Assembly (NCBI GenBank): GCA_037447605.1
Contig: CM074804.1
Coordinates: forward strand, 1,488,001 to 1,552,000
Reading direction: 5' to 3'
Origin: Zygnema circumcarinatum SAG 698-1b
Taxonomy: Eukaryota; Plantae; Zygnematophyceae
DNA length: 64,000 nucleotides
A program made the position numbers and the translations under genes. Of this stretch, positions 11,291 to 19,363 are shown piece after piece (the first letter of the stretch is position 1; each line of letters starts with the position of its first letter). A model generated the notes under the pieces. The model was given only the letters and a program-made list of their open reading frames with translations. It ran no database searches and was not told the origin of the DNA.

Positions 11291-12044
11291 AGGCATGGGC
11301 CAGGGCGAGGGAGGCAGGGGCAGGTGCAAGGGCAAGGACTCGCCGCTGCTCAACTCCGCCGTCGTCACTTCGCGTCCTCGCTGACCACTCTCCCGTGGTG
11401 CTTATGAGGTCCGTGAGGACGTGGTTGCCGCAAGGTGGGTGTTGTTGGTGGGAGAAAAAGAAACCCTAAATTGTGCCAGCCCTGCAACGCTGCTCTGCGC
11501 GGCGGCGGGTCGCGGCGTCCGGGCGGCGGCCGTGAGGCGCTCGCACGTGCGTGACGCGCATGGCGACAAGGCGGGGCACGATTCCTGATCGGCGGAAAGC
11601 TGGAATTTCGAAACGGGGGGCCTCTGGAGGCCCCCCGTTTCGGAGCGCGGAATTCTGAAATTTGGGGACATTTTTGTAGCCTATTCCGCCGTACGGACGT
11701 GACAGACAGGTTCGGGGGGAGCCGCGGTTTCCGATCCGAATTCGGAAATCGAAATCAATACCTTTCCGCGGTCGAAATCTTGCAATTCCGCGGGCGATGG
11801 TCAAGGTCTGACTCCCCCTATTACCATAGCACAGCATAGAAACGAAATTTAGGACATGTTTAGCTGATAGTAGAATTTCGGCATGTTTGAGGGCGACACA
11901 TTTAACTGCAAGCAGTCGTGATTGACACCAGGATGTGAATTTCGCACATAGAAAACAAAATTAGGAAACGAAATTGTGGTAGCAGGATTTGTGCTTTCAT
12001 TCGGAGAGCTTGCACTTTTGCATCCACGGAGTCGNNNNNNNNNN

Positions 12045-13322
12045 GCAGCAACCGCAACAGCAAGAGCAGCAACCGCAACAGCAGCAGCAGCAGCAGGAGG
12101 AGCAGGAGTAGGAGTAGGAGCAGCAGCACAGCAACAGCAGCAGCAAAAAAAGAAGCAGAAGCAATAGAAGCAGAAGCAGTAGAAAAAGCAGCAGCAAAAA
12201 AAACAGAAGCAATAAGAGCAACAGCAGAAGCAGAAGCAGCAGCAGCAGCACCAACAGCAACAACAACAGCAGTAGTAGCAGCAGCACCACCACCAACAGC
12301 AACAACAACAGCAGTAGTAGCAGCAGCAGCAGAAAAAAAAGCAGCAGCAGTAGCAACAGCAGCAGCAGCAGTAACAACAGCAGAAGCAGAAGCAGCAGCC
12401 AGCACCAGCAGCAAGAGCAGCAGCAGCAATAGCAGCAGCAGTAGCAGCAGCAGCAGCAGGAGGAACAACAGCAGCACGAGCAACAGCAGCACAGCAATAG
12501 CAACAGCAGCAGAAAAAGAAGCAGCAAAAAAAAAACCAGCAGCAGCAGCAGCAGTAAGAGCAGCAAGGGAGACAAGGGAGGCATGGGCCAGGGCGAGGGA
12601 GGCAGGGGCAGGTGCAAGGGCAAGGACTCGCCGCTGCTCAACTCCGCCGTCGTCACTTCGCGTCCTCGCTGACCACTCTCCCGTGGTGCTTATGAGGTCC
12701 GTGAGGACGTGGTTGCCGCAAGGTGGGTGTTGTTGGTGGGAGAAAAAGAAACCCTAAATTGTGCCAGCCCTGCAACGCTGCTCTGCGCGGCGGCGGGTCG
12801 CGGCGTCCGGGCGGCGGCCGTGAGGCGCTCGCACGTGCGTGACGCGCATGGCGACAAGGCGGGGCACGATTCCTGATCGGCGGAAAGCTGGAATTTCGAA
12901 ACGGGGGGCCTCTGGAGGCCCCCCGTTTCGGAGCGCGGAATTCTGAAATTTGGGGACATTTTTGTAGCCTATTCCGCCGTACGGACGTGACAGACAGGTT
13001 CGGGGGGAGCCGCGGTTTCCGATCCGAATTCGGAAATCGAAATCAATACCTTTCCGCGGTCGAAATCTTGCAATTCCGCGGGCGATGGTCAAGGTCTGAC
13101 TCCCCCTATTACCATAGCACAGCATAGAAACGAAATTTAGGACATGTTTAGCTGATAGTAGAATTTCGGCATGTTTGAGGGCGACACATTTAACTGCAAG
13201 CAGTCGTGATTGACACCAGGATGTGAATTTCGCACATAGAAAACAAAATTAGGAAACGAAATTGTGGTAGCAGGATTTGTGCTTTCATTCGGAGAGCTTG
13301 CACTTTTGCATCCACGGAGTCG
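12045..13322. other. Apparently exact 1278-bp copy of 10757-12034 directly after a 10-N gap; probable assembly overlap
   Basis: Constant offset of 1288 with identical ORFs in the track (11402..11671 vs 12690..12959). Copy 1 ends at the gap (12035-12044). Confidence 0.88.
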
Positions 13323-13801: not shown

Positions 13802-15571
13802 CTATACAGAGACTGTCTGTCTTTCTGTGGCTAAAGACAAGCCATAGAGCTTAGAATACTTCCTGGTAATGTAGGAAATATAGCCGTCAGGGTCCAACTT
13901 TTTCCCAGTCAGTTTTTCCACAAGCTCGTCTGCAGTCGGATACAAGCATCCAACTGAATGCACATTCGTCCTTAGCCACTCCCTCAGCGGCTGAAATCTG
14001 CCCTTGCTAATATCAGAGTTAAGCCCCGGAAGCGCCTTTCCAGCAGCTTCAAAAATCTGGCAGGCATACACATTGCCGATCGTATACGTTGGAAAATACC
14101 CATACCCAATTGTCCAGTGAATGTCCTGCAGACATCCTTCGGAGGGCTTCTTAGGCACAACTCCCAAATACTCCTCCATTTTCTGGTTCCAAATGGCTGG
14201 AATCTCCTTCACAGAGAGGCTCCCCTCCATTAGGCCTCGCTCTATCTCATAGCGCAAAAGCACATGCAGAGTATAGGAAACCTCATCCGCCTCCACCCTA
14301 ATCAGGCTCGGCTTCACCTCATTCACAATACGGTGAAACTGCGAATACCCACTTTTTGGAAGCGATGAATATGAGCGAAGCATGACAGGCCAGTAGTGTT
14401 CCCAAAACGCTTCACTCATGCCAACTTGGCATTCCCACAGAAGAGATTGGCTCTCGTGAAGACCAAGACTTCGAGCTTTAGCAGCCGGTAAGCCCTGTGC
14501 CGCAAGCTCTGCATTCAAGCCTTGCTCATACAGACCATGGCCTCCCTCATGCATAACACCCAAAATTCCAGAAACGACATCAGTTTCCGAGAAGCGATCG
14601 GTGAGGCGCACATCATAAGGGCTCGCGATTCCTGAAGTAAAAGGGTGAGTTGATTCATCCAATCTTCCGCTCTCATAACAGAAGCCTATCTCTTCCGAGA
14701 ATCGCCTCGCCAGCCGTTTTTGCGTTTCTAAGGAGAAATGTCCGCTAAAAAGATCCATAGACTTCAGAAATTCACGATCTATTTCAGAAGATGAAGCCAC
14801 AATGCTGCGCAGAAGCTCCGTTAATGGTCCCTTGAGTTTTCCGAAAAGCAAATCAAGCTGAGACGATTTCATGCCTGGCTCATATATGTCAAGGCAGTAA
14901 TCATAGGGAGAGAGATGAGGCTCCACTACAGCAGCAAGCTTTTGTTGGATATCAACCCATTCCTGCAAAGCAGGTGCAAAAATGTCAAAATTTTCTGCAT
15001 TTCTGGCTTCCTCCCATAGAGCAGTCGAGCGGCTGGTCAATGAAGCTGACTGTGCTTCCAGCTCTAATGGTGTCCTCAATGCGCGCTGAAAATTTCGCAT
15101 AGCTTCACGAACAGAAGCAGTCTCCATGTCCGAAAATCCGGATTCCTGCAAGGGTTGATGAGCTAGACAGAGCTCATCAAGGAGATTTCCGAGAGAAGAC
15201 TCAGTTTTTTTTATATGGAGAGCTTTTGAAACTGCTTCAACCTGCCGCGCCCGAGCAGGAGCTCCCTTGGGAGGCATCATGACCTGCTGGTCCCAAAAAA
15301 GGAGATTTCTGACAGACTCAAGCGCTTCAATCTCAGTAAGCTTCTCCTTTAGCATATCAAATGGAACTCTCAGATCCTTCTTAGAAACGCCCTTGCTGCT
15401 GCTTCCTTCTTCAGACGTGCTTGCAGACGCCGAAATCCTGCATGAAAGACGGCTTTTCAAAGGGATCGGGGAAGCTCTAAGGCTTGGCAGGAATCCTGCA
15501 CAGCCTCCGGTCCACGCTGACGCCATCTGCAGAGAGAGGACGGCGGAGGCGGTCCTCGCGGCGGCAGCCAT
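13802..15571 (-). CDS. Intronless M32 family metallocarboxypeptidase (carboxypeptidase Taq-like) with a predicted plastid transit peptide
   Basis: HEGGH zinc motif, HESQS, IRVEADEVSY, GCLQDIHW and GYFPTY. The N-terminal 50 aa are Ala/Ser/Arg-rich (MAAAARTASAVLSLQ...RISASAS). Confidence 0.93.
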   Translation of the reverse strand: MAAAARTASAVLSLQMASAWTGGCAGFLPSLRASPIPLKSRLSCRISASASTSEEGSSSKGVSKKDLRVPFDMLKEKLTEIEALESVRNLLFWDQQVMMPPKGAPARARQVEAVSKALHIKKTESSLGNLLDELCLAHQPLQESGFSDMETASVREAMRNFQRALRTPLELEAQSASLTSRSTALWEEARNAENFDIFAPALQEWVDIQQKLAAVVEPHLSPYDYCLDIYEPGMKSSQLDLLFGKLKGPLTELLRSIVASSSEIDREFLKSMDLFSGHFSLETQKRLARRFSEEIGFCYESGRLDESTHPFTSGIASPYDVRLTDRFSETDVVSGILGVMHEGGHGLYEQGLNAELAAQGLPAAKARSLGLHESQSLLWECQVGMSEAFWEHYWPVMLRSYSSLPKSGYSQFHRIVNEVKPSLIRVEADEVSYTLHVLLRYEIERGLMEGSLSVKEIPAIWNQKMEEYLGVVPKKPSEGCLQDIHWTIGYGYFPTYTIGNVYACQIFEAAGKALPGLNSDISKGRFQPLREWLRTNVHSVGCLYPTADELVEKLTGKKLDPDGYISYITRKYSKLYGLSLATERQTVSV

Positions 15572-15903
15572 GGCTCCTGCTCCTACTGACTGCAGTTCCT
15601 GCAGGAAACCCACACCAAGAGGGCGAGCCAACCTTTGGCACTGCCGCCCGGACTTATACGACAATAGTACCTTCAGATCTCACTTTATTGTACGCTTACC
15701 GGAGGAACGCATGTACTGGTTCTGAACTCTGTTTCATCCGGACACCAATCGTTGGCACGCCCCCTGTGTTGGCGCCTCCCCGTTCATACAATGCCGCCGT
15801 CCAGTACAGGACACGTCACTGTATGGTTTCGTACACATTGCCGTACGGCCCACCACCATTGCAAGGCAATGGTCACGTTACACACGGTCCTCGGCATTAG
15901 TTA

Positions 15904-16051: not shown

Positions 16052-16808
16052 TCTTGATTGGATTTACTGAACGAAATGAATAGCGGGAAGTGATATGGTG
16101 AAGGCTATGAGTGAATGTTTCAGTCAAGACTTATTTCACTCTCAGTCCCATCTCGCATTTCTTTGATGGACGAAAACAACTCGTGCTTCCAATGGCTACC
16201 CATATTGCGCTACTTCGTTAATTCAGAGCTGAATGTTTCATCATCTAGGTGGTCTCGCGCTGAAATTCAAGCACTTGCGTTGAAGTTAGTAATTCGCATC
16301 ATAAAAGCAACCTACGTTGGGAATCGGGTAATCGCATCATGGTGAATCGCGCTCTGAAGGACCGAAGTCCGGAACACCCTCAAAGTTGTTAAGATTAAAG
16401 TGTGCGTCTGTTCCTCTTTACCAGATCAAACGACTCAGATATGATAAGTCTGACCAGCTCCAGCCAGCTGAGACTAAAACTAAACTTGGAACAGTGTGTA
16501 CAAATTCGCACAAATACCTCTCTTGAAATTTGACACTCCGATCAGCTCCTACTGCTTGCCCAACCTTAAGTTCGTTATGCCTCACGACCTAACAACTACA
16601 GGAACAGATAGACGTCCAGAGCCACACTTCTGCAACGAAACTGAAACCGAAACCGGAACACAAGCTCTGTAAACAAACACGCATACAAACTCCTCTTTCT
16701 GAAACACGAAACGAGCAGTGAAAATGAAAGAATGCAATTCAGTTCAGACAGTTTTCACCCAGATTGTCGTTGGAAACAATTGGCAAATTCTGAAGAGATG
16801 ACCAAAAA

Positions 16809-18621
16809 TCAGTCAGCCTGCTGCTCGGGGTCCATCTGCTCTTCCGACGGCGCGAGTGTGATCTGCACTTCCGGCAGCGCGAGTGCCGAACTCTCAACGA
16901 AGTGCAGGGTTGGATTTCTGCAGACGATTTTTTTTTCAACGAATGAATTTCAAGTTCTGCTGTAAAACCAAAAACGATTATCGAATTTATCTTGTCATAA
17001 CGACAAATTGAAAAATGTCTGCAGATATATGGGAGACTAACCGTGTAAGTTTCCTTGCCAAGTACAGGAAAGGCTTCTCAAAGTTGTACGTCGACTTCGC
17101 ATAAATTTCATAATACTGCATGTTCTTCTTGCAATGGAACGTCACTTCCTTTGCCTTCACGTTCCTGTTCTTCACATCCACCTTATTGCCACAAAGGACA
17201 ATAGGGATGTTCTCACAGACTCTGCACATAAGAACATGCAAACCCTGCTCAATAAAAAGGAAGGAAAGCTAAGGAAAGCTTGTTGAGCGACAATTGTCAA
17301 ACAAACTAACCTGCAAAGATCCCGATGCCATGTAGGCACGTTCTTGTAAGTCACCCGACAAGTCACATCAAACATGATGATGGCACACTGTCCTGCGACA
17401 CTGTAGAAACAACACCCCCCCGAATTAGACAAGAACGTCGCAACAAGGTCAAGTATACTTAAAAAGCCATCCAAGGAATGTCAGCCACCGTACATGCACC
17501 ACTTCTTTACGCTGCACCGTACATGCACCACTTCTTTACGCTGCAGTCAGCATGCTAGACGCTAACTGATAATAGTAAATTCCAAAAACAATAGATAAAG
17601 AATGGTACAAGAAAATTGAAGAGTCTTAAGAGATCAAATGTTAAGCTGGCACATAAAAACTCACTAGTAACCATCACGCAATCCTCCACACTTCTCCACG
17701 CCACTTGTATCCCAACAAAAGAATCTGATCTTCCCACAGTTTGTGAGGAAGTCAAGACGATGCACTTCCACACCCATTGTGGCTGCATTCAGGCAAACAT
17801 TCCTAGAAAAATCTAAGTAAGATTCATAAACATAAGGCTTGAGCACCAGAAAACAAATAAAAATCCTTTCTGCAAACAGGATTCTTACGTTCATATAGCT
17901 TCACAAACTCTCCCTTCACATGACGTTTCACGAACGTTGTCTTTCCTGCATCCACAAGTTGAGCAACTTTAATACCGGTCCAATTCCAACATCATGCCAA
18001 ACAGACGAAATCGACCCTTAGACATAAGAATTTCCCCTTTCACAAACCGTATGCTTACAAATCCTACGTCAAGAAAGAAGTATTTGAGTTTATCGATTAC
18101 AGGAAACCTGTAGTCGTCCAAAAAGTAGAGTGGTGGACCTACAACCCTGTCTAGTTGATTGGTGCAAACAAGAGACCTTCGACACCGACAGTGTCTTGCA
18201 AAGGGAACACCTAAGAAACCCTAAATACCACAGTTTTGAGTAACTAGGACGCCTTCCTCGTCACTCAAAACTGTGGTATTTAGGCCATGCAACCAATTTA
18301 ACCTGTGCGGAACACAGCAGTTCTGCATCAGTTAAAATCCAGCCCGGCCACCGTACCTGTTCCGCCATCCCCGACCAAGATGAGGTTGAAACTTGGACAA
18401 TCTCCAGAGATGTGCTGGCCTGGAAGCGCCTGCAAAAATGAAGAGACGCGTACAAGTCAACAAGCCGAAAACGTGCAACAACATAACAAAAAATATTTCA
18501 TCTCACGGCCTACTTAAAAATCAGCAAGCTCTGACAGAAAAGTCTTCCACAGGCAAGAGACAATGAGAACTGATGTCAGGATGATAGGCGGCCCCATGCA
18601 GGATGCAAAAAACCTCACCAT
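16809..18621 (-). CDS. RAN: Divergent Ran GTPase paralogue with Q69 replaced by V and no acidic C-terminal tail; intact frame, 7 exons
   Basis: M|[24 protein letters not shown]|[19 protein letters not shown]|[39 protein letters not shown]|[13 protein letters not shown]...HRDLCR|[15 protein letters not shown]...[22 protein letters not shown]|[19 protein letters not shown]...DPEQQAD*. All introns are GT-AG and in phase. Confidence 0.85.
18220..18284. repeat. Perfect 22-bp inverted repeat with a 21-nt spacer in a Ran-like intron
   Basis: CCTAAATACCACAGTTTTGAGT ... ACTCAAAACTGTGGTATTTAGG. Confidence 0.92.
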
Positions 18622-18819
18622 GATTATCTGTTCCCACGCCCTCGCCCTCGCCCGCCTCCCTCTAAGCAGCAGCAGCAGCAGCAGCAGCAGCGCCTTGCAG
18701 GGCAAATATTTCCTTTGGCGCGGGAACGAGCGCGCTCGGCGGGTTCAATTTTTTCGCGCGCCCAAGCGTTTGAAGAGGCAGGCGACGCCGAAACAAGAGC
18801 CGCTCCCTTCCAATGAAAA

Positions 18820-18995
18820 ACGCCACGTGGCTGTTTGTCCTGTACGGAATCGCCACGTGTTGACAAAAGTGTTTTTGCTGACAAAAACACTCTTTCAGTG
18901 GGGCGCGCTTTGACTGCGAACTAAACTTGTCGAGCACCTTCCAATGACGACAAGCCACGTGTACTCCACGGCCAGTGACAACGTGCCACGTATAG
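18820..18995. promoter_or_regulatory. G-box/ABRE-like cluster upstream of the Ran-like gene
   Basis: GCCACGTGGC, GCCACGTGTT, GCCACGTGTA and GCCACGTA occur within about 170 bp. Confidence 0.45.
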
Positions 18996-19363
18996 CGTGC
19001 AGCCAATGACGTCACGCCCCGTGTGTTTTGTGTTCCTGTCGATGGAGAGGCCTCGTCTTTGAAAAAGCGGCTCTTCGTGGTTTCACAAGCTGGGTCTGTC
19101 CATGTCCATCGACTGCAAGACTGGTTTCACATTGCATCGTTTCATAGAAGCCAGCAAAAACTTGAAATTTCATACACATCGTTGTAGTCAATCGCCAGCA
19201 TAATAGAGAAAGCAGACTTTCATTGTTGAGTCACTTTAAGTCTAAAACAGATAGGGTGAGGGCCCTTCACAGCACATGCTTTTCCCGTTCTCCCTCTTCT
19301 TCGGTCCTTTTTGCCAAGCGCGGAACAGCAAAGCACAATAGCTAAATTTTGGAAATTTTAAAC

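What the first reader, a model, noticed from the sequence alone, without database searches (positions are those of the whole stretch)
16809..18621. Intact Ran paralogue predicted GTPase-deficient (Q69 to V) and lacking the acidic tail
Seen: all 7 exons and splice sites are preserved with no frameshift, yet switch II reads DTSGVEKC instead of DTAGQEKF. G5 reads EIYAK instead of EISAK, FHC replaces FHR, and the protein ends DPEQQAD* without the DEDDD-like tail. Known: Ran is extremely conserved, Q69L locks Ran in the GTP state, and the acidic tail is needed for RanBP1 interplay. Inference: either a young pseudogene, or a neofunctionalised dominant-active Ran that could perturb nuclear transport or spindle assembly.
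Basis: partly seen in the sequence, partly recalled or inferred. Interest (0 to 1): 0.7.

Follow-up and report, generated by a model that had tools for sequence, protein, structure and literature searches.

The report
Cycle-dead, oddly spliced Ran gene duplicate
A plant-lineage alga carries an extra, expressed copy of the nuclear-transport switch gene Ran that has lost the residues needed to switch off and recycle, but its RNA often skips the exon carrying those changes, so it looks more like a duplicate drifting out of use than a proven new "always-on" Ran.

Summary
On the minus strand, 16809-18621, a 7-exon, 209-aa open frame with GT..AG at every intron encodes a plant-type Ran. It is about 80% identical to canonical plant Ran. 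Switch II reads DTSGVEKC (A67S, Q69V, F72C). Also present are R140C, S150Y and P49R, and a short tail without the acidic end.

It is a paralogue. RNA contigs of the same organism include a far more abundant transcript reading AGQEKFGG.

The gene is transcribed and spliced in four runs from four studies. However, exon 4, which carries switch II, is skipped in two of the three runs that resolve that junction. One skip shifts the frame; the other removes 42 residues in frame. The codons for SGVEKC were covered in none of the four runs.

Two tracts are (near-)identical to the parent transcript and sit beside strongly diverged sequence, which suggests gene conversion.

A frame and splice sites this intact are unlikely under pure neutral decay. 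Yet the replacements are no more conservative than random ones.

No relative with these changes was found, but the searches were limited. dN/dS could not be computed because the parent coding sequence was out of reach.

Verdict: a lineage-specific Ran duplicate under relaxed constraint, cycle-dead if translated. A dominant-active role is unproven. The scan had already noted a Ran-derived hairpin elsewhere in this genome.

The parts
18619..18756 (-). Exon 1: 5' UTR (includes a CTG/CAG repeat at 18664-18690) ending with the ATG at 18621-18619
   Evidence: In all four runs, contigs run from exon 2 into the sequence starting at 18619/18620. They were reported as loose ends of 78-138 nt because the repeat was masked. 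The 5' limit is a minimum.
18357..18429 (-). Exon 2: N-terminus and start of the P-loop (GDGGTG)
   Evidence: Model. The joint 17944|18356 (equivalent to 17945|18357) is seen in all four runs.
17889..17945 (-). Exon 3: end of the P-loop and first half of switch I (T32K, E36V, K38L)
   Evidence: Its donor joins three different acceptors in different runs.
17665..17782 (-). Exon 4, which behaves as a cassette exon: T42, P49R and switch [10 protein letters not shown]. Codons are S67 at 17705-17703, V69 at 17699-17697 and C72 at 17690-17688.
   Evidence: The exon 3-4 joint 17782|17889 appears only in run X17. The exon is skipped in X15 and X8. No contig in any run covers 17665-17706, and the 17665|17400 joint was never seen.
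17311..17400 (-). Exon 5, with an alternative acceptor at 17392 used when exon 4 is skipped in run X8. That combination removes 42 residues in frame.
   Evidence: Joints 17400|17889 (X15) and 17391|17888 (X8). The translations give a 56-aa truncated product and a 167-aa product.
17042..17221 (-). Exon 6: NKVD (intact), FHC (R140C, codon 17133-17131) and EIYAK (S150Y, codon 17103-17101)
   Evidence: Joints 17221|17311 (2 runs) and 16917|17042 (4 runs).
16650..16917 (-). Exon 7: rearranged short tail, stop codon at 16811-16809, and a 3' UTR reaching at least 16650
   Evidence: Contigs run on to the edge of the laid stretch in all four runs.
16834..16885 (-). In-frame 27-nt tandem duplication inside exon 7 (LALPEVQIT / LAPSEEQMD). 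It replaces the canonical tail helix, including the Tyr197 equivalent.
   Evidence: Direct-repeat family D1, 88% identical with 27-nt spacing. Alignment to canonical tails.
17177..17221 (-). Tract identical to the abundant parent Ran transcript; a candidate gene-conversion tract
   Evidence: A 50-nt contig at depth 502 covers 17177-17226 without mismatch, against depth of about 5 for the paralogue. The same tract is only 78% identical to another alga's Ran coding sequence. Fisher p = 6e-5 against the diverged 25 nt.
17708..17782 (-). Second tract (near-)identical to the parent transcript, ending just before the switch II codons
   Evidence: A contig at depth of about 2480 in run X7 fits 17707-17785 at 95% or better, then continues with 25 nt reading T-AGQEKFGG. 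Those 25 nt differ at 8 positions (read by hand). Fisher p = 4e-4.
18810..19025 (.). Upstream region with four CCAAT-N9-10-CCACGTG-like modules (G-box/ACGT cores, one TGACGTCA); the likely promoter
   Evidence: Direct-repeat family D2 and motif positions. Promoter function is inferred.

Best explanation
This is a lineage-specific, DNA-level duplicate of the alga's own plant-type Ran gene, with all six introns kept. It is transcribed from its own promoter at a few percent of the parent's level and has left the Ran cycle. If the full frame is translated, the product keeps the P-loop, Thr42, DxxG and NKVD. It lacks the catalytic Gln69, so RanGAP could not switch it off. It lacks Phe72 and Gln69 for NTF2 binding, so GDP-form import would fail. 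It also lacks Arg140 of the basic patch, and the Tyr197/acidic tail that autoinhibits Ran and binds RanBP1. Its G5 Ser is replaced by Tyr, which probably weakens guanine binding. It would therefore be a non-cycling pseudo-GTPase, not a working Ran. The gene appears to be evolving under relaxed constraint. Replacements hit invariant sites and are random in kind, parts are overwritten by gene conversion from the parent, and splicing is leaky, with exon 4 (the switch exon) often skipped. The most likely status is a duplicate that stayed protein-coding for much of its history and is now marginal or on its way out. Shown here: the structure, the substitutions, expression, splice forms, the existence of the parent, and the mosaic similarity. 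Inferred: the biochemical consequences, the relaxed selection and the present status.
For: The 209-aa intact model and its motifs come. It is 79-80% identical to canonical Ran of moss, flowering plants and a zygnematophyte-like alga, with 47 differences. These include sites that are 93-100% invariant in 43 full-length canonical Rans: K12N, T32K, E36V, P49R, A67S, Q69V, F72C, I81V, R140C, S150Y, N154T, G170R, P184L and D190T. The parent transcript reading AGQEKFGG has depth of about 2480, against about 58-66 for this gene. Spliced contigs occur in 4 runs from 4 studies. Exon 4 skipping is seen in X15 (frameshift, 56 aa) and X8 (in-frame loss of 42 aa), at the same depth as the rest of the gene. 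Inclusion is seen only in X17, at about 40% of the 3'-exon depth. Intron-retaining contigs are also present. The replacement spectrum is not more conservative than simulated neutral change (mean BLOSUM62 -0.32 against -0.54 +/- 0.31, p = 0.26). Similarity to the parent is mosaic, and a 33-residue run carries no change (p = 0.03). GC3 is 0.58, against 0.41 GC in its introns and 0.80 GC3 in another alga's Ran. The tail is rearranged by a 27-nt tandem duplication. The consequences of Q69L, tail loss and Y197A in human Ran are described in PMC8607414.
Against: The open frame, the ATG and all 12 splice dinucleotides are intact. In simulations, neutral change sufficient for 30-40 replacements leaves no stop in only 11-19% of runs. 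The splice and ATG bases stay untouched in about 6-13%, and no frameshifting indel occurs in about 0.6-16%. Jointly that is roughly 1e-3 or less. The 19 core nucleotide-binding residues counted carry only one change. This points to selection for a protein for at least much of the gene's history. Contigs cannot show that the full-length form is absent, and the conditions sampled are unknown. dN/dS was not measured.
Confidence: 0.5

Rival explanations
1. It is a maintained, neofunctionalised atypical Ran: a protein kept by selection that binds GTP but cannot hydrolyse it or cycle. It would act by abundance, or by regulated inclusion of exon 4, for example as a stage- or stress-specific modulator, a decoy of importin-beta-type receptors, or a player in a genetic conflict.
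For: The frame and splice sites are intact beyond the neutral expectation. The P-loop, T42, DxxG and NKVD are intact. Changes cluster on regulator contacts: switch I, switch II, the basic patch and the tail (PMC8607414). The gene is expressed in four studies. The upstream region carries repeated CCAAT/G-box modules. One exon-4-skipped form restores the frame through an alternative acceptor. There are precedents: AtRan4 lacks the acidic tail and effector domain (PMC2814108), and Drosophila Ran-like copies evolve under purifying and positive selection (PMC8645118).
Against: No orthologue with these changes turned up among the protein fragments, the 305 fetched Rans or the metagenome contigs, though these searches were limited. 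S150Y in G5 is expected to hurt nucleotide binding. The replacements are random in kind. The switch II codons have no RNA coverage in 4 runs, and exon 4 is skipped in 2 of 3 informative runs. The 42-residue deletion removes core strands of the G domain, so that form cannot be a GTPase.
Confidence: 0.3
2. The locus now matters only as RNA. Its transcripts would be targets, sources or sponges of small RNAs from the Ran-derived hairpin noted elsewhere in this genome, or a donor/acceptor partner for gene conversion with the parent. The protein would be irrelevant.
For: Contigs in X15 and X7 carry a 34-nt Ran-like piece (17176-17209) flanked by unrelated sequence, with a 5-nt insertion relative to this gene, so further transcribed Ran-derived fragments exist. 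This locus produces several unproductive splice forms and retained introns. A strong hairpin sits in intron 2.
Against: No small-RNA data were available. The hairpin's sequence could not be compared with this gene, and the by-sequence look-up was blank. An RNA-only role does not explain why the frame stays open.
Confidence: 0.12
3. It is the organism's only or main Ran, or an assembly artefact.
For: None beyond the gene being intact and expressed.
Against: An abundant transcript with canonical AGQEKFGG exists in the same RNA run. Six DNA runs from three studies hold 92-94% of the locus's sampled words. Ran with these replacements is unknown among the 305 fetched relatives.
Confidence: 0.02

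Closest known systems
Arabidopsis AtRan4 (At5g55080), the divergent fourth Ran of Arabidopsis
   Same: It is a plant-lineage Ran paralogue that sits beside near-identical canonical copies. [quoted passage not shown]
   Different: Orthology was not tested, because AtRan4 was not among the fetched proteins. From memory only, AtRan4 keeps the catalytic AGQEK. Here Q69 is Val and G5 Ser is Tyr. This copy is about 80% identical to canonical Ran and looks lineage-specific.
Drosophila Ran-like genes (recurrent Ran duplicates)
   Same: They are extra copies of an otherwise ultra-conserved Ran that evolve much faster than the parent (omega about 0.5 against about 0.01). Their expression is restricted, and some are becoming pseudogenes (PMC8645118).
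   Different: The fly copies are intronless retrogenes with testis-biased expression, and are linked to meiotic-drive conflict. This copy kept all six introns, so it is a DNA duplication. No stage bias or conflict has been shown for it.
Engineered RanQ69L, Ran(1-210) and Ran(1-179) mutants
   Same: The same residue or region is hit. Q69L is insensitive to RanGAP and does not bind NTF2. Removing the DEDDDL, or disturbing the tail (Y197A), raises the preference for GTP (PMC8607414). The best PDB matches to exon 4 are in fact Q-to-L Gsp1 constructs.
   Different: Those are single laboratory changes in an otherwise perfect Ran. This is a natural gene with about 45 further changes, including G5 S150Y and R140C, and none of its biochemistry has been measured.
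Atypical small GTPases and pseudoGTPases such as Rnd proteins and RhoH (own knowledge, not checked here)
   Same: They are Ras-superfamily members that lost the catalytic residue, do not cycle, and are controlled by expression level.
   Different: Those are conserved families with shown functions. No conservation or function has been shown here, and no Ran-derived member of that class is known to me.

Membership tests
Ran family by descent (homology) | Ras-fold G domain whose best matches are Ran/Gsp1; P-loop GDGGTGKT; NKVD; no C-terminal lipidation box | tested here: met
   Pfam Ras matches exons 5 and 6. Ran/Gsp1 are the best PDB matches, far ahead of Rab7. It is 79-80% identical to canonical plant Ran. 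The protein ends ...QQAD, with no Cys box.
Ran family by descent (homology) | Plant Ran exon-intron layout | tested here: met
   Genomic exon-ORF fragments of many plants start and end exon 6 at the same residues (RVCEN...KLAG) and show the same exon 5 limits. Only these boundaries were compared.
Canonical cycling Ran (function) | Catalytic Gln69 in switch II DTAGQE | tested here: not met
   The motif reads DTSGVE. Codon GTG is at 17699-17697, against CAG in the parent transcript. All 174 readable switch II motifs among 305 fetched Ran proteins and fragments read AGQEK.
Canonical cycling Ran (function) | Phe72 and Gln69 for NTF2 binding | tested here: not met
   F72C and Q69V. The role of these residues is taken from PMC8607414 and its citation of Stewart et al. 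1998. Binding itself was not assayed.
Canonical cycling Ran (function) | G5 motif SAK | tested here: not met
   The motif reads YAK (S150Y), while this site is 100% Ser in 43 full-length canonical Rans.
Canonical cycling Ran (function) | Basic patch HRKK and an autoinhibitory tail ending in an acidic DEDDDL-like run | tested here: not met
   The patch reads HCKK. The tail is 14-20 residues shorter, is rearranged by a 27-nt duplication and has no acidic run.
Canonical cycling Ran (function) | GTP/GDP binding, RanGAP-stimulated hydrolysis, RCC1-driven exchange | not testable with these tools
   This needs recombinant protein.
Pseudogene (non-functional duplicate) | Stops, frameshifts or broken splice dinucleotides | tested here: not met
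   There are none in the 630-nt frame or at the 12 splice dinucleotides. The tail is truncated relative to canonical Ran.
Pseudogene (non-functional duplicate) | Unproductive or aberrant transcripts | tested here: met
   Exon 4 is skipped with a frameshift in X15 and with a 42-residue loss in X8. Contigs retaining introns 2, 4 and 6 are also present.
Pseudogene (non-functional duplicate) | dN/dS near 1 on its branch; disabling variants among strains | not tested
   The parent coding sequence of the same genome and orthologues could not be fetched. Proxy tests disagree: the frame is intact beyond the neutral expectation, but the replacements are neutral-like in kind.
AtRan4-type divergent plant Ran | Orthology with AtRan4 (shared derived residues, tree position) | not tested
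Only the shared loss of the acidic tail is known, from PMC2814108.

The most novel reading that the evidence does not exclude
A natural 'atypical Ran': a selection-maintained Ran-derived protein that cannot be switched off by RanGAP or recycled by NTF2. Its dose would be set by low transcription and by alternative splicing of the switch-encoding exon, and possibly by siRNAs from a Ran-derived hairpin. It would act as a conditional brake or decoy on nuclear transport or spindle assembly in a close algal relative of land plants.
Probability: 0.22. Interest if true: 0.7.

Novelty: new variant of a known kind. Interest (0 to 1): 0.38.

Why it matters
Ran is among the most conserved eukaryotic proteins, and natural copies without the catalytic glutamine are, as far as I know, undescribed. 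If this copy makes protein, it would be a built-in RanQ69L-like molecule. It could show how a cell tolerates or uses a non-cycling Ran, and it would give plant biology a second case, beside the unexplained AtRan4, of a tail-less Ran.

If instead it is decaying, it is a well-resolved snapshot of how a duplicate of an essential dosage-sensitive switch is disarmed. The steps visible here are loss of cycle residues, a leaky exon, low expression and patchy gene conversion. Together with the Ran-derived hairpin and a further Ran fragment, it points to birth-and-death turnover of Ran copies in this genome.

Tried and rejected
1. The joined 209-aa model was never sent to any search, fold or look-up tool, because it has no reference. 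It was built and used only inside scripts from window coordinates. Consequently there is no full-length search, no exact-sequence look-up and no structure prediction of it.

2. The word search with the 84-aa ORF around exon 6 returned only canonical fragments and no copy of the window's own ORF.

3. Profiles built from a database Ran fragment plus exon rows given by reference (A3, A6) were swamped by canonical Rans. A paralogue-like full-length protein ranked below the best 120 would have stayed hidden. MAFFT misplaced short exon rows in A2, A4 and A5, and those alignments were discarded.

4. I tried to reach the parent Ran of the same genome. The Logan contig L001 is another alga (75% DNA identity). 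An exact look-up of the neighbouring intronless M32 peptidase found nothing on record. The 80 metagenome loci are all 87% DNA identity or less and canonical in sequence. dN/dS was therefore not computed.

5. I looked for a relic of the acidic tail after the stop codon in another frame. QNLPIVSNDN against QALPLPDDDD gives p of about 0.015 in 2 of 18 tests, which is not significant after correction.

6. A retrogene origin is rejected, because six introns sit at the plant positions.

7. An apicomplexan or parasite context is rejected. The sequence is plant-type, and earlier notes call the genome a streptophyte alga.

8. There is no second Ran copy in the window.

9. The big representative search was not run. 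Clusters at 50% identity cannot separate an 80%-identical paralogue from canonical Ran, and the operators asked for restraint.

10. The by-sequence look-up in earlier findings was blank, which is uninformative according to the operators.

Full report
**What is in the sequence**

The finding lies on the minus strand. Rebuilding the gene from the window gives seven exons: 18621-18619 (the ATG alone, at the end of a 5' UTR exon), 18429-18357, 17945-17889, 17782-17665, 17400-17311, 17221-17042 and 16917-16809. All six introns are GT..AG. The frame is 630 nt and 209 codons with no internal stop.

Exons 5 and 6 match Pfam Ras. Exons 6 and 4 match solved Ran/Gsp1 chains with E 2e-28 and 2e-12, far ahead of Rab7. 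Those alignments place exon 4 on human Ran residues 42-79 and exon 6 on residues 111-168, so human numbering equals model numbering minus 4.

There is no other Ran copy in the window.

**What kind of Ran it is**

Earlier notes of this scan call the genome a streptophyte alga. The protein fits that description. Its N-terminus and many residues that looked odd against animal Ran are the normal plant state.

A local BLASTP of the joined model, built inside a script, was run against 305 fetched Ran proteins and fragments. It gives 79-80% identity to canonical Ran of a moss, of flowering plants and of a zygnematophyte-like alga alike.

Against 43 full-length canonical plant and green-algal Rans it differs at 47 positions. 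Many of these are 93-100% invariant: K12N, T32K, E36V, P49R, A67S, Q69V, F72C, I81V, L96V, Q130N, R140C, L144M, S150Y, N154T, G170R, P184L, D190T and Q194S.

The P-loop GDGGTGKT, Thr42, Asp65/Gly68 and NKVD are unchanged.

The tail is not merely cut. A 27-nt in-frame tandem duplication (16834-16858 and 16861-16885) repeats the LALPEVQIT segment as LAPSEEQMD. It is followed by six residues and a stop. As a result the Tyr197 equivalent and the acidic run are both missing. A possible relic of the acidic run in another frame after the stop is not significant.

**It is a paralogue**

Contigs of four runs from four studies were laid on 16650-18750.

- Run X7 has a contig at depth of about 2480 that fits 17707-17785. 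It then continues with 25 letters that, read on the gene's strand, encode T-A-G-Q-E-K-F-G-G. This gene's own contigs have depth of about 58-66 in the same run.
- A 50-nt contig at depth 502 in X15 fits 17177-17226 exactly, against depth of about 5 for this gene. Depth of about 2900 is seen at the same place in X8.

So a canonical, far more abundant Ran mRNA exists in the same organism.

Within those 25 letters the two genes differ at 8 positions:
- three are synonymous;
- two lie in GCT>AGT (Ala>Ser);
- two lie in CAG>GTG (Gln>Val);
- one lies in TTT>TGT (Phe>Cys).

The contrast with the (near-)identical tracts beside them is significant (p = 4e-4 and 6e-5). Those tracts are not conserved across species at the DNA level. 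They are 78% identical to another alga's Ran coding sequence, and 40-67% of the identical codons there carry synonymous differences.

The simplest reading is patchy gene conversion from the parent. A 33-residue stretch without any replacement (human 97-129) fits this (p = 0.03). One caveat applies: a de Bruijn contig may be partly chimeric, so the 79-nt tract could be shorter. The 50-nt tract is solid.

**Expression and splicing**

No run is on record as RNA, but the contigs are spliced.

- Joint 16917|17042 is seen in four runs.
- Joint 17221|17311 is seen in two runs.
- Joint 17944|18356 is seen in four runs.
- In all four runs, contigs pass from exon 2 into the exon that ends with the ATG.

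The region around exon 4 behaves differently:
- The exon 3-4 joint (17782|17889) is seen only in X17, at depth 3.8 against 9.2 for exons 6-7.
- X15 joins exon 3 straight to exon 5 (17400|17889), at depth 6.7 against 4.8.
- X8 joins exon 3 to an acceptor 8 nt inside exon 5 (17392), at depth 58.9 against about 57-71.
- In X7 the contig stops exactly at the end of exon 3.

Translation shows that the X15 form shifts frame and ends after 56 residues. The X8 form stays in frame but lacks 42 residues, from just before Thr42 to just after switch II, giving 167 aa. A G domain without those strands cannot be a GTPase.

The exon 4-5 joint was never seen. No contig in any run covers 17665-17706, the part that encodes [14 protein letters not shown].

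Contigs retaining parts of introns 2, 4 and 6 are also present.

Contigs show presence, not absence, and the conditions sampled are unknown. Still, the only RNA evidence for the variant switch II is one junction in one run.

**Selection**

A proper dN/dS was not possible, because the parent coding sequence of this genome could not be fetched (see the limits below). Two proxy tests were run.

- Neutral survival of the frame. In simulations, neutral change sufficient for 30-40 replacements leaves the frame free of stops in 11-19% of runs. The 24 splice bases plus the ATG stay untouched in about 6-13%. A frameshifting indel is avoided in about 0.6-16%, depending on the assumed indel rate. Jointly this is of the order of 1e-3, so the copy was probably kept as a coding gene for much of its history. 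The figure is rough, and gene conversion can also repair a copy.
- Kind of replacement. The replacements are not more conservative than random mutation would give (p = 0.26), and they hit invariant residues. GC3 is 0.58, which lies between the intron GC content (0.41) and the GC3 of an expressed algal Ran (0.80).

Together these point to relaxed constraint rather than either extreme.

**What the protein would do**

For human Ran the following is reported in PMC8607414, which also cites Stewart et al. 1998:
- Q69L is not deactivated by RanGAP.
- Q69L fails to bind NTF2 in either nucleotide state.
- Removing the DEDDDL raises the preference for GTP.
- Disturbing Tyr197 or other tail contacts also raises the preference for GTP.
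- A complete tail is needed for RanBP1/2-assisted disassembly.

By inference, the full-length product here could not be switched off, re-imported or efficiently stripped from transport receptors.

From general knowledge of the G5 motif (not tested here), Tyr in place of the small G5 Ser should disturb guanine binding. The protein may therefore bind nucleotide poorly, which would make it a pseudoGTPase.

**Searches for relatives, and their limits**

- The joined model was never sent to a tool. Exons were searched by reference.
- The word search around exon 6 could only see proteins of 46-147 aa. It found only canonical fragments.
- Two profile searches mixing a database Ran with exon rows were saturated by canonical Rans. 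A full-length orthologue scoring below the best 120 would be invisible.
- A metagenome scan used the peptides [16 protein letters not shown] and NVKAKEVT among its patterns.
- The organism's own proteins seem not to be in the collections.
- Absence of relatives is therefore weak evidence.

**Comparison with known cases**

- AtRan4 of Arabidopsis is reported as the one plant Ran without the acidic tail and effector domain, with an unknown role (PMC2814108, PMC4766155).
- Drosophila repeatedly gained fast-evolving Ran-like retrogenes, some of which are decaying (PMC8645118).
- This gene is a DNA duplicate with introns. It additionally lacks the catalytic Gln, so it is a new variant of the divergent Ran duplicate.

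The scan had already noted a transcribed hairpin made from a piece of a divergent Ran-like gene elsewhere in this genome (s1-387195). In my data, low-depth contigs in X15 and X7 carry a 34-nt Ran piece (17176-17209) with foreign flanks and a 5-nt insertion. More Ran-derived fragments are therefore transcribed. Whether the hairpin derives from or targets this gene could not be tested.

**Verdict**

- Most likely (about 0.5) this is a lineage-specific Ran duplicate under relaxed constraint, cycle-dead if translated, leaky in splicing, and marginal or on its way out.
- A maintained atypical Ran remains a serious rival (about 0.3).

Noticed in passing
window 18220-18284 (intron 2 of the Ran copy): A near-perfect 30-bp hairpin with a 5-nt loop. 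As RNA on the gene's strand it folds at -46 kcal/mol (z = -8.2). It is unique in the window and is covered by an intron-retaining contig in run X7. It could be a tiny foldback element or an intronic small-RNA precursor.
   Followed up: partly
window 17486-17543 (intron 4): An exact 29-nt tandem duplication. Contigs in X7 and X8 cover 17363-17544 contiguously with exon 5, which indicates either a retained intron part or an internal transcription start.
   Followed up: no
window 18810-19025: Four spaced CCAAT-N9-10-CCACGTG-like modules (G-box/ACGT cores, one TGACGTCA) sit upstream of the Ran copy. CACGTG is frequent in the whole window as well: 41 sites in 64 kb.
   Followed up: partly
window 17176-17209, seen in contigs of runs X15 and X7: Low-depth transcripts carry a 34-nt Ran-like piece flanked by unrelated sequence, with a 5-nt insertion relative to this gene. 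This indicates a further transcribed Ran-derived fragment elsewhere in the genome, possibly the hairpin of note s1-387195.
   Followed up: no
window 17917-18012: In run X7, a 96-nt unspliced intron 2/exon 3 contig at depth 52 differs at three letters, including C>G at 17976. It may be a second allele or a near-identical second copy.
   Followed up: no
window 13802-15664 (minus strand): An intronless 589-620-aa ORF for a carboxypeptidase Taq (M32) metallopeptidase (Pfam E 5e-157), with an N-terminal extension that looks like a targeting peptide. It lies 1.1 kb downstream of the Ran copy.
   Followed up: partly
window 11466-11837 and 12754-13125: Two identical 123-aa ORFs lie 1288 nt apart, next to long CAG/CTG runs.
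   Followed up: no
locus L001 (Logan contig of run ERR12684110) and proteins P0243/P0245: The canonical Ran of another streptophyte alga is 97-98% identical to two Spirogloea-style gene models (SM000...). One of these (P0245) is a Rab-Ran fusion model that is probably an annotation merge.
   Followed up: no
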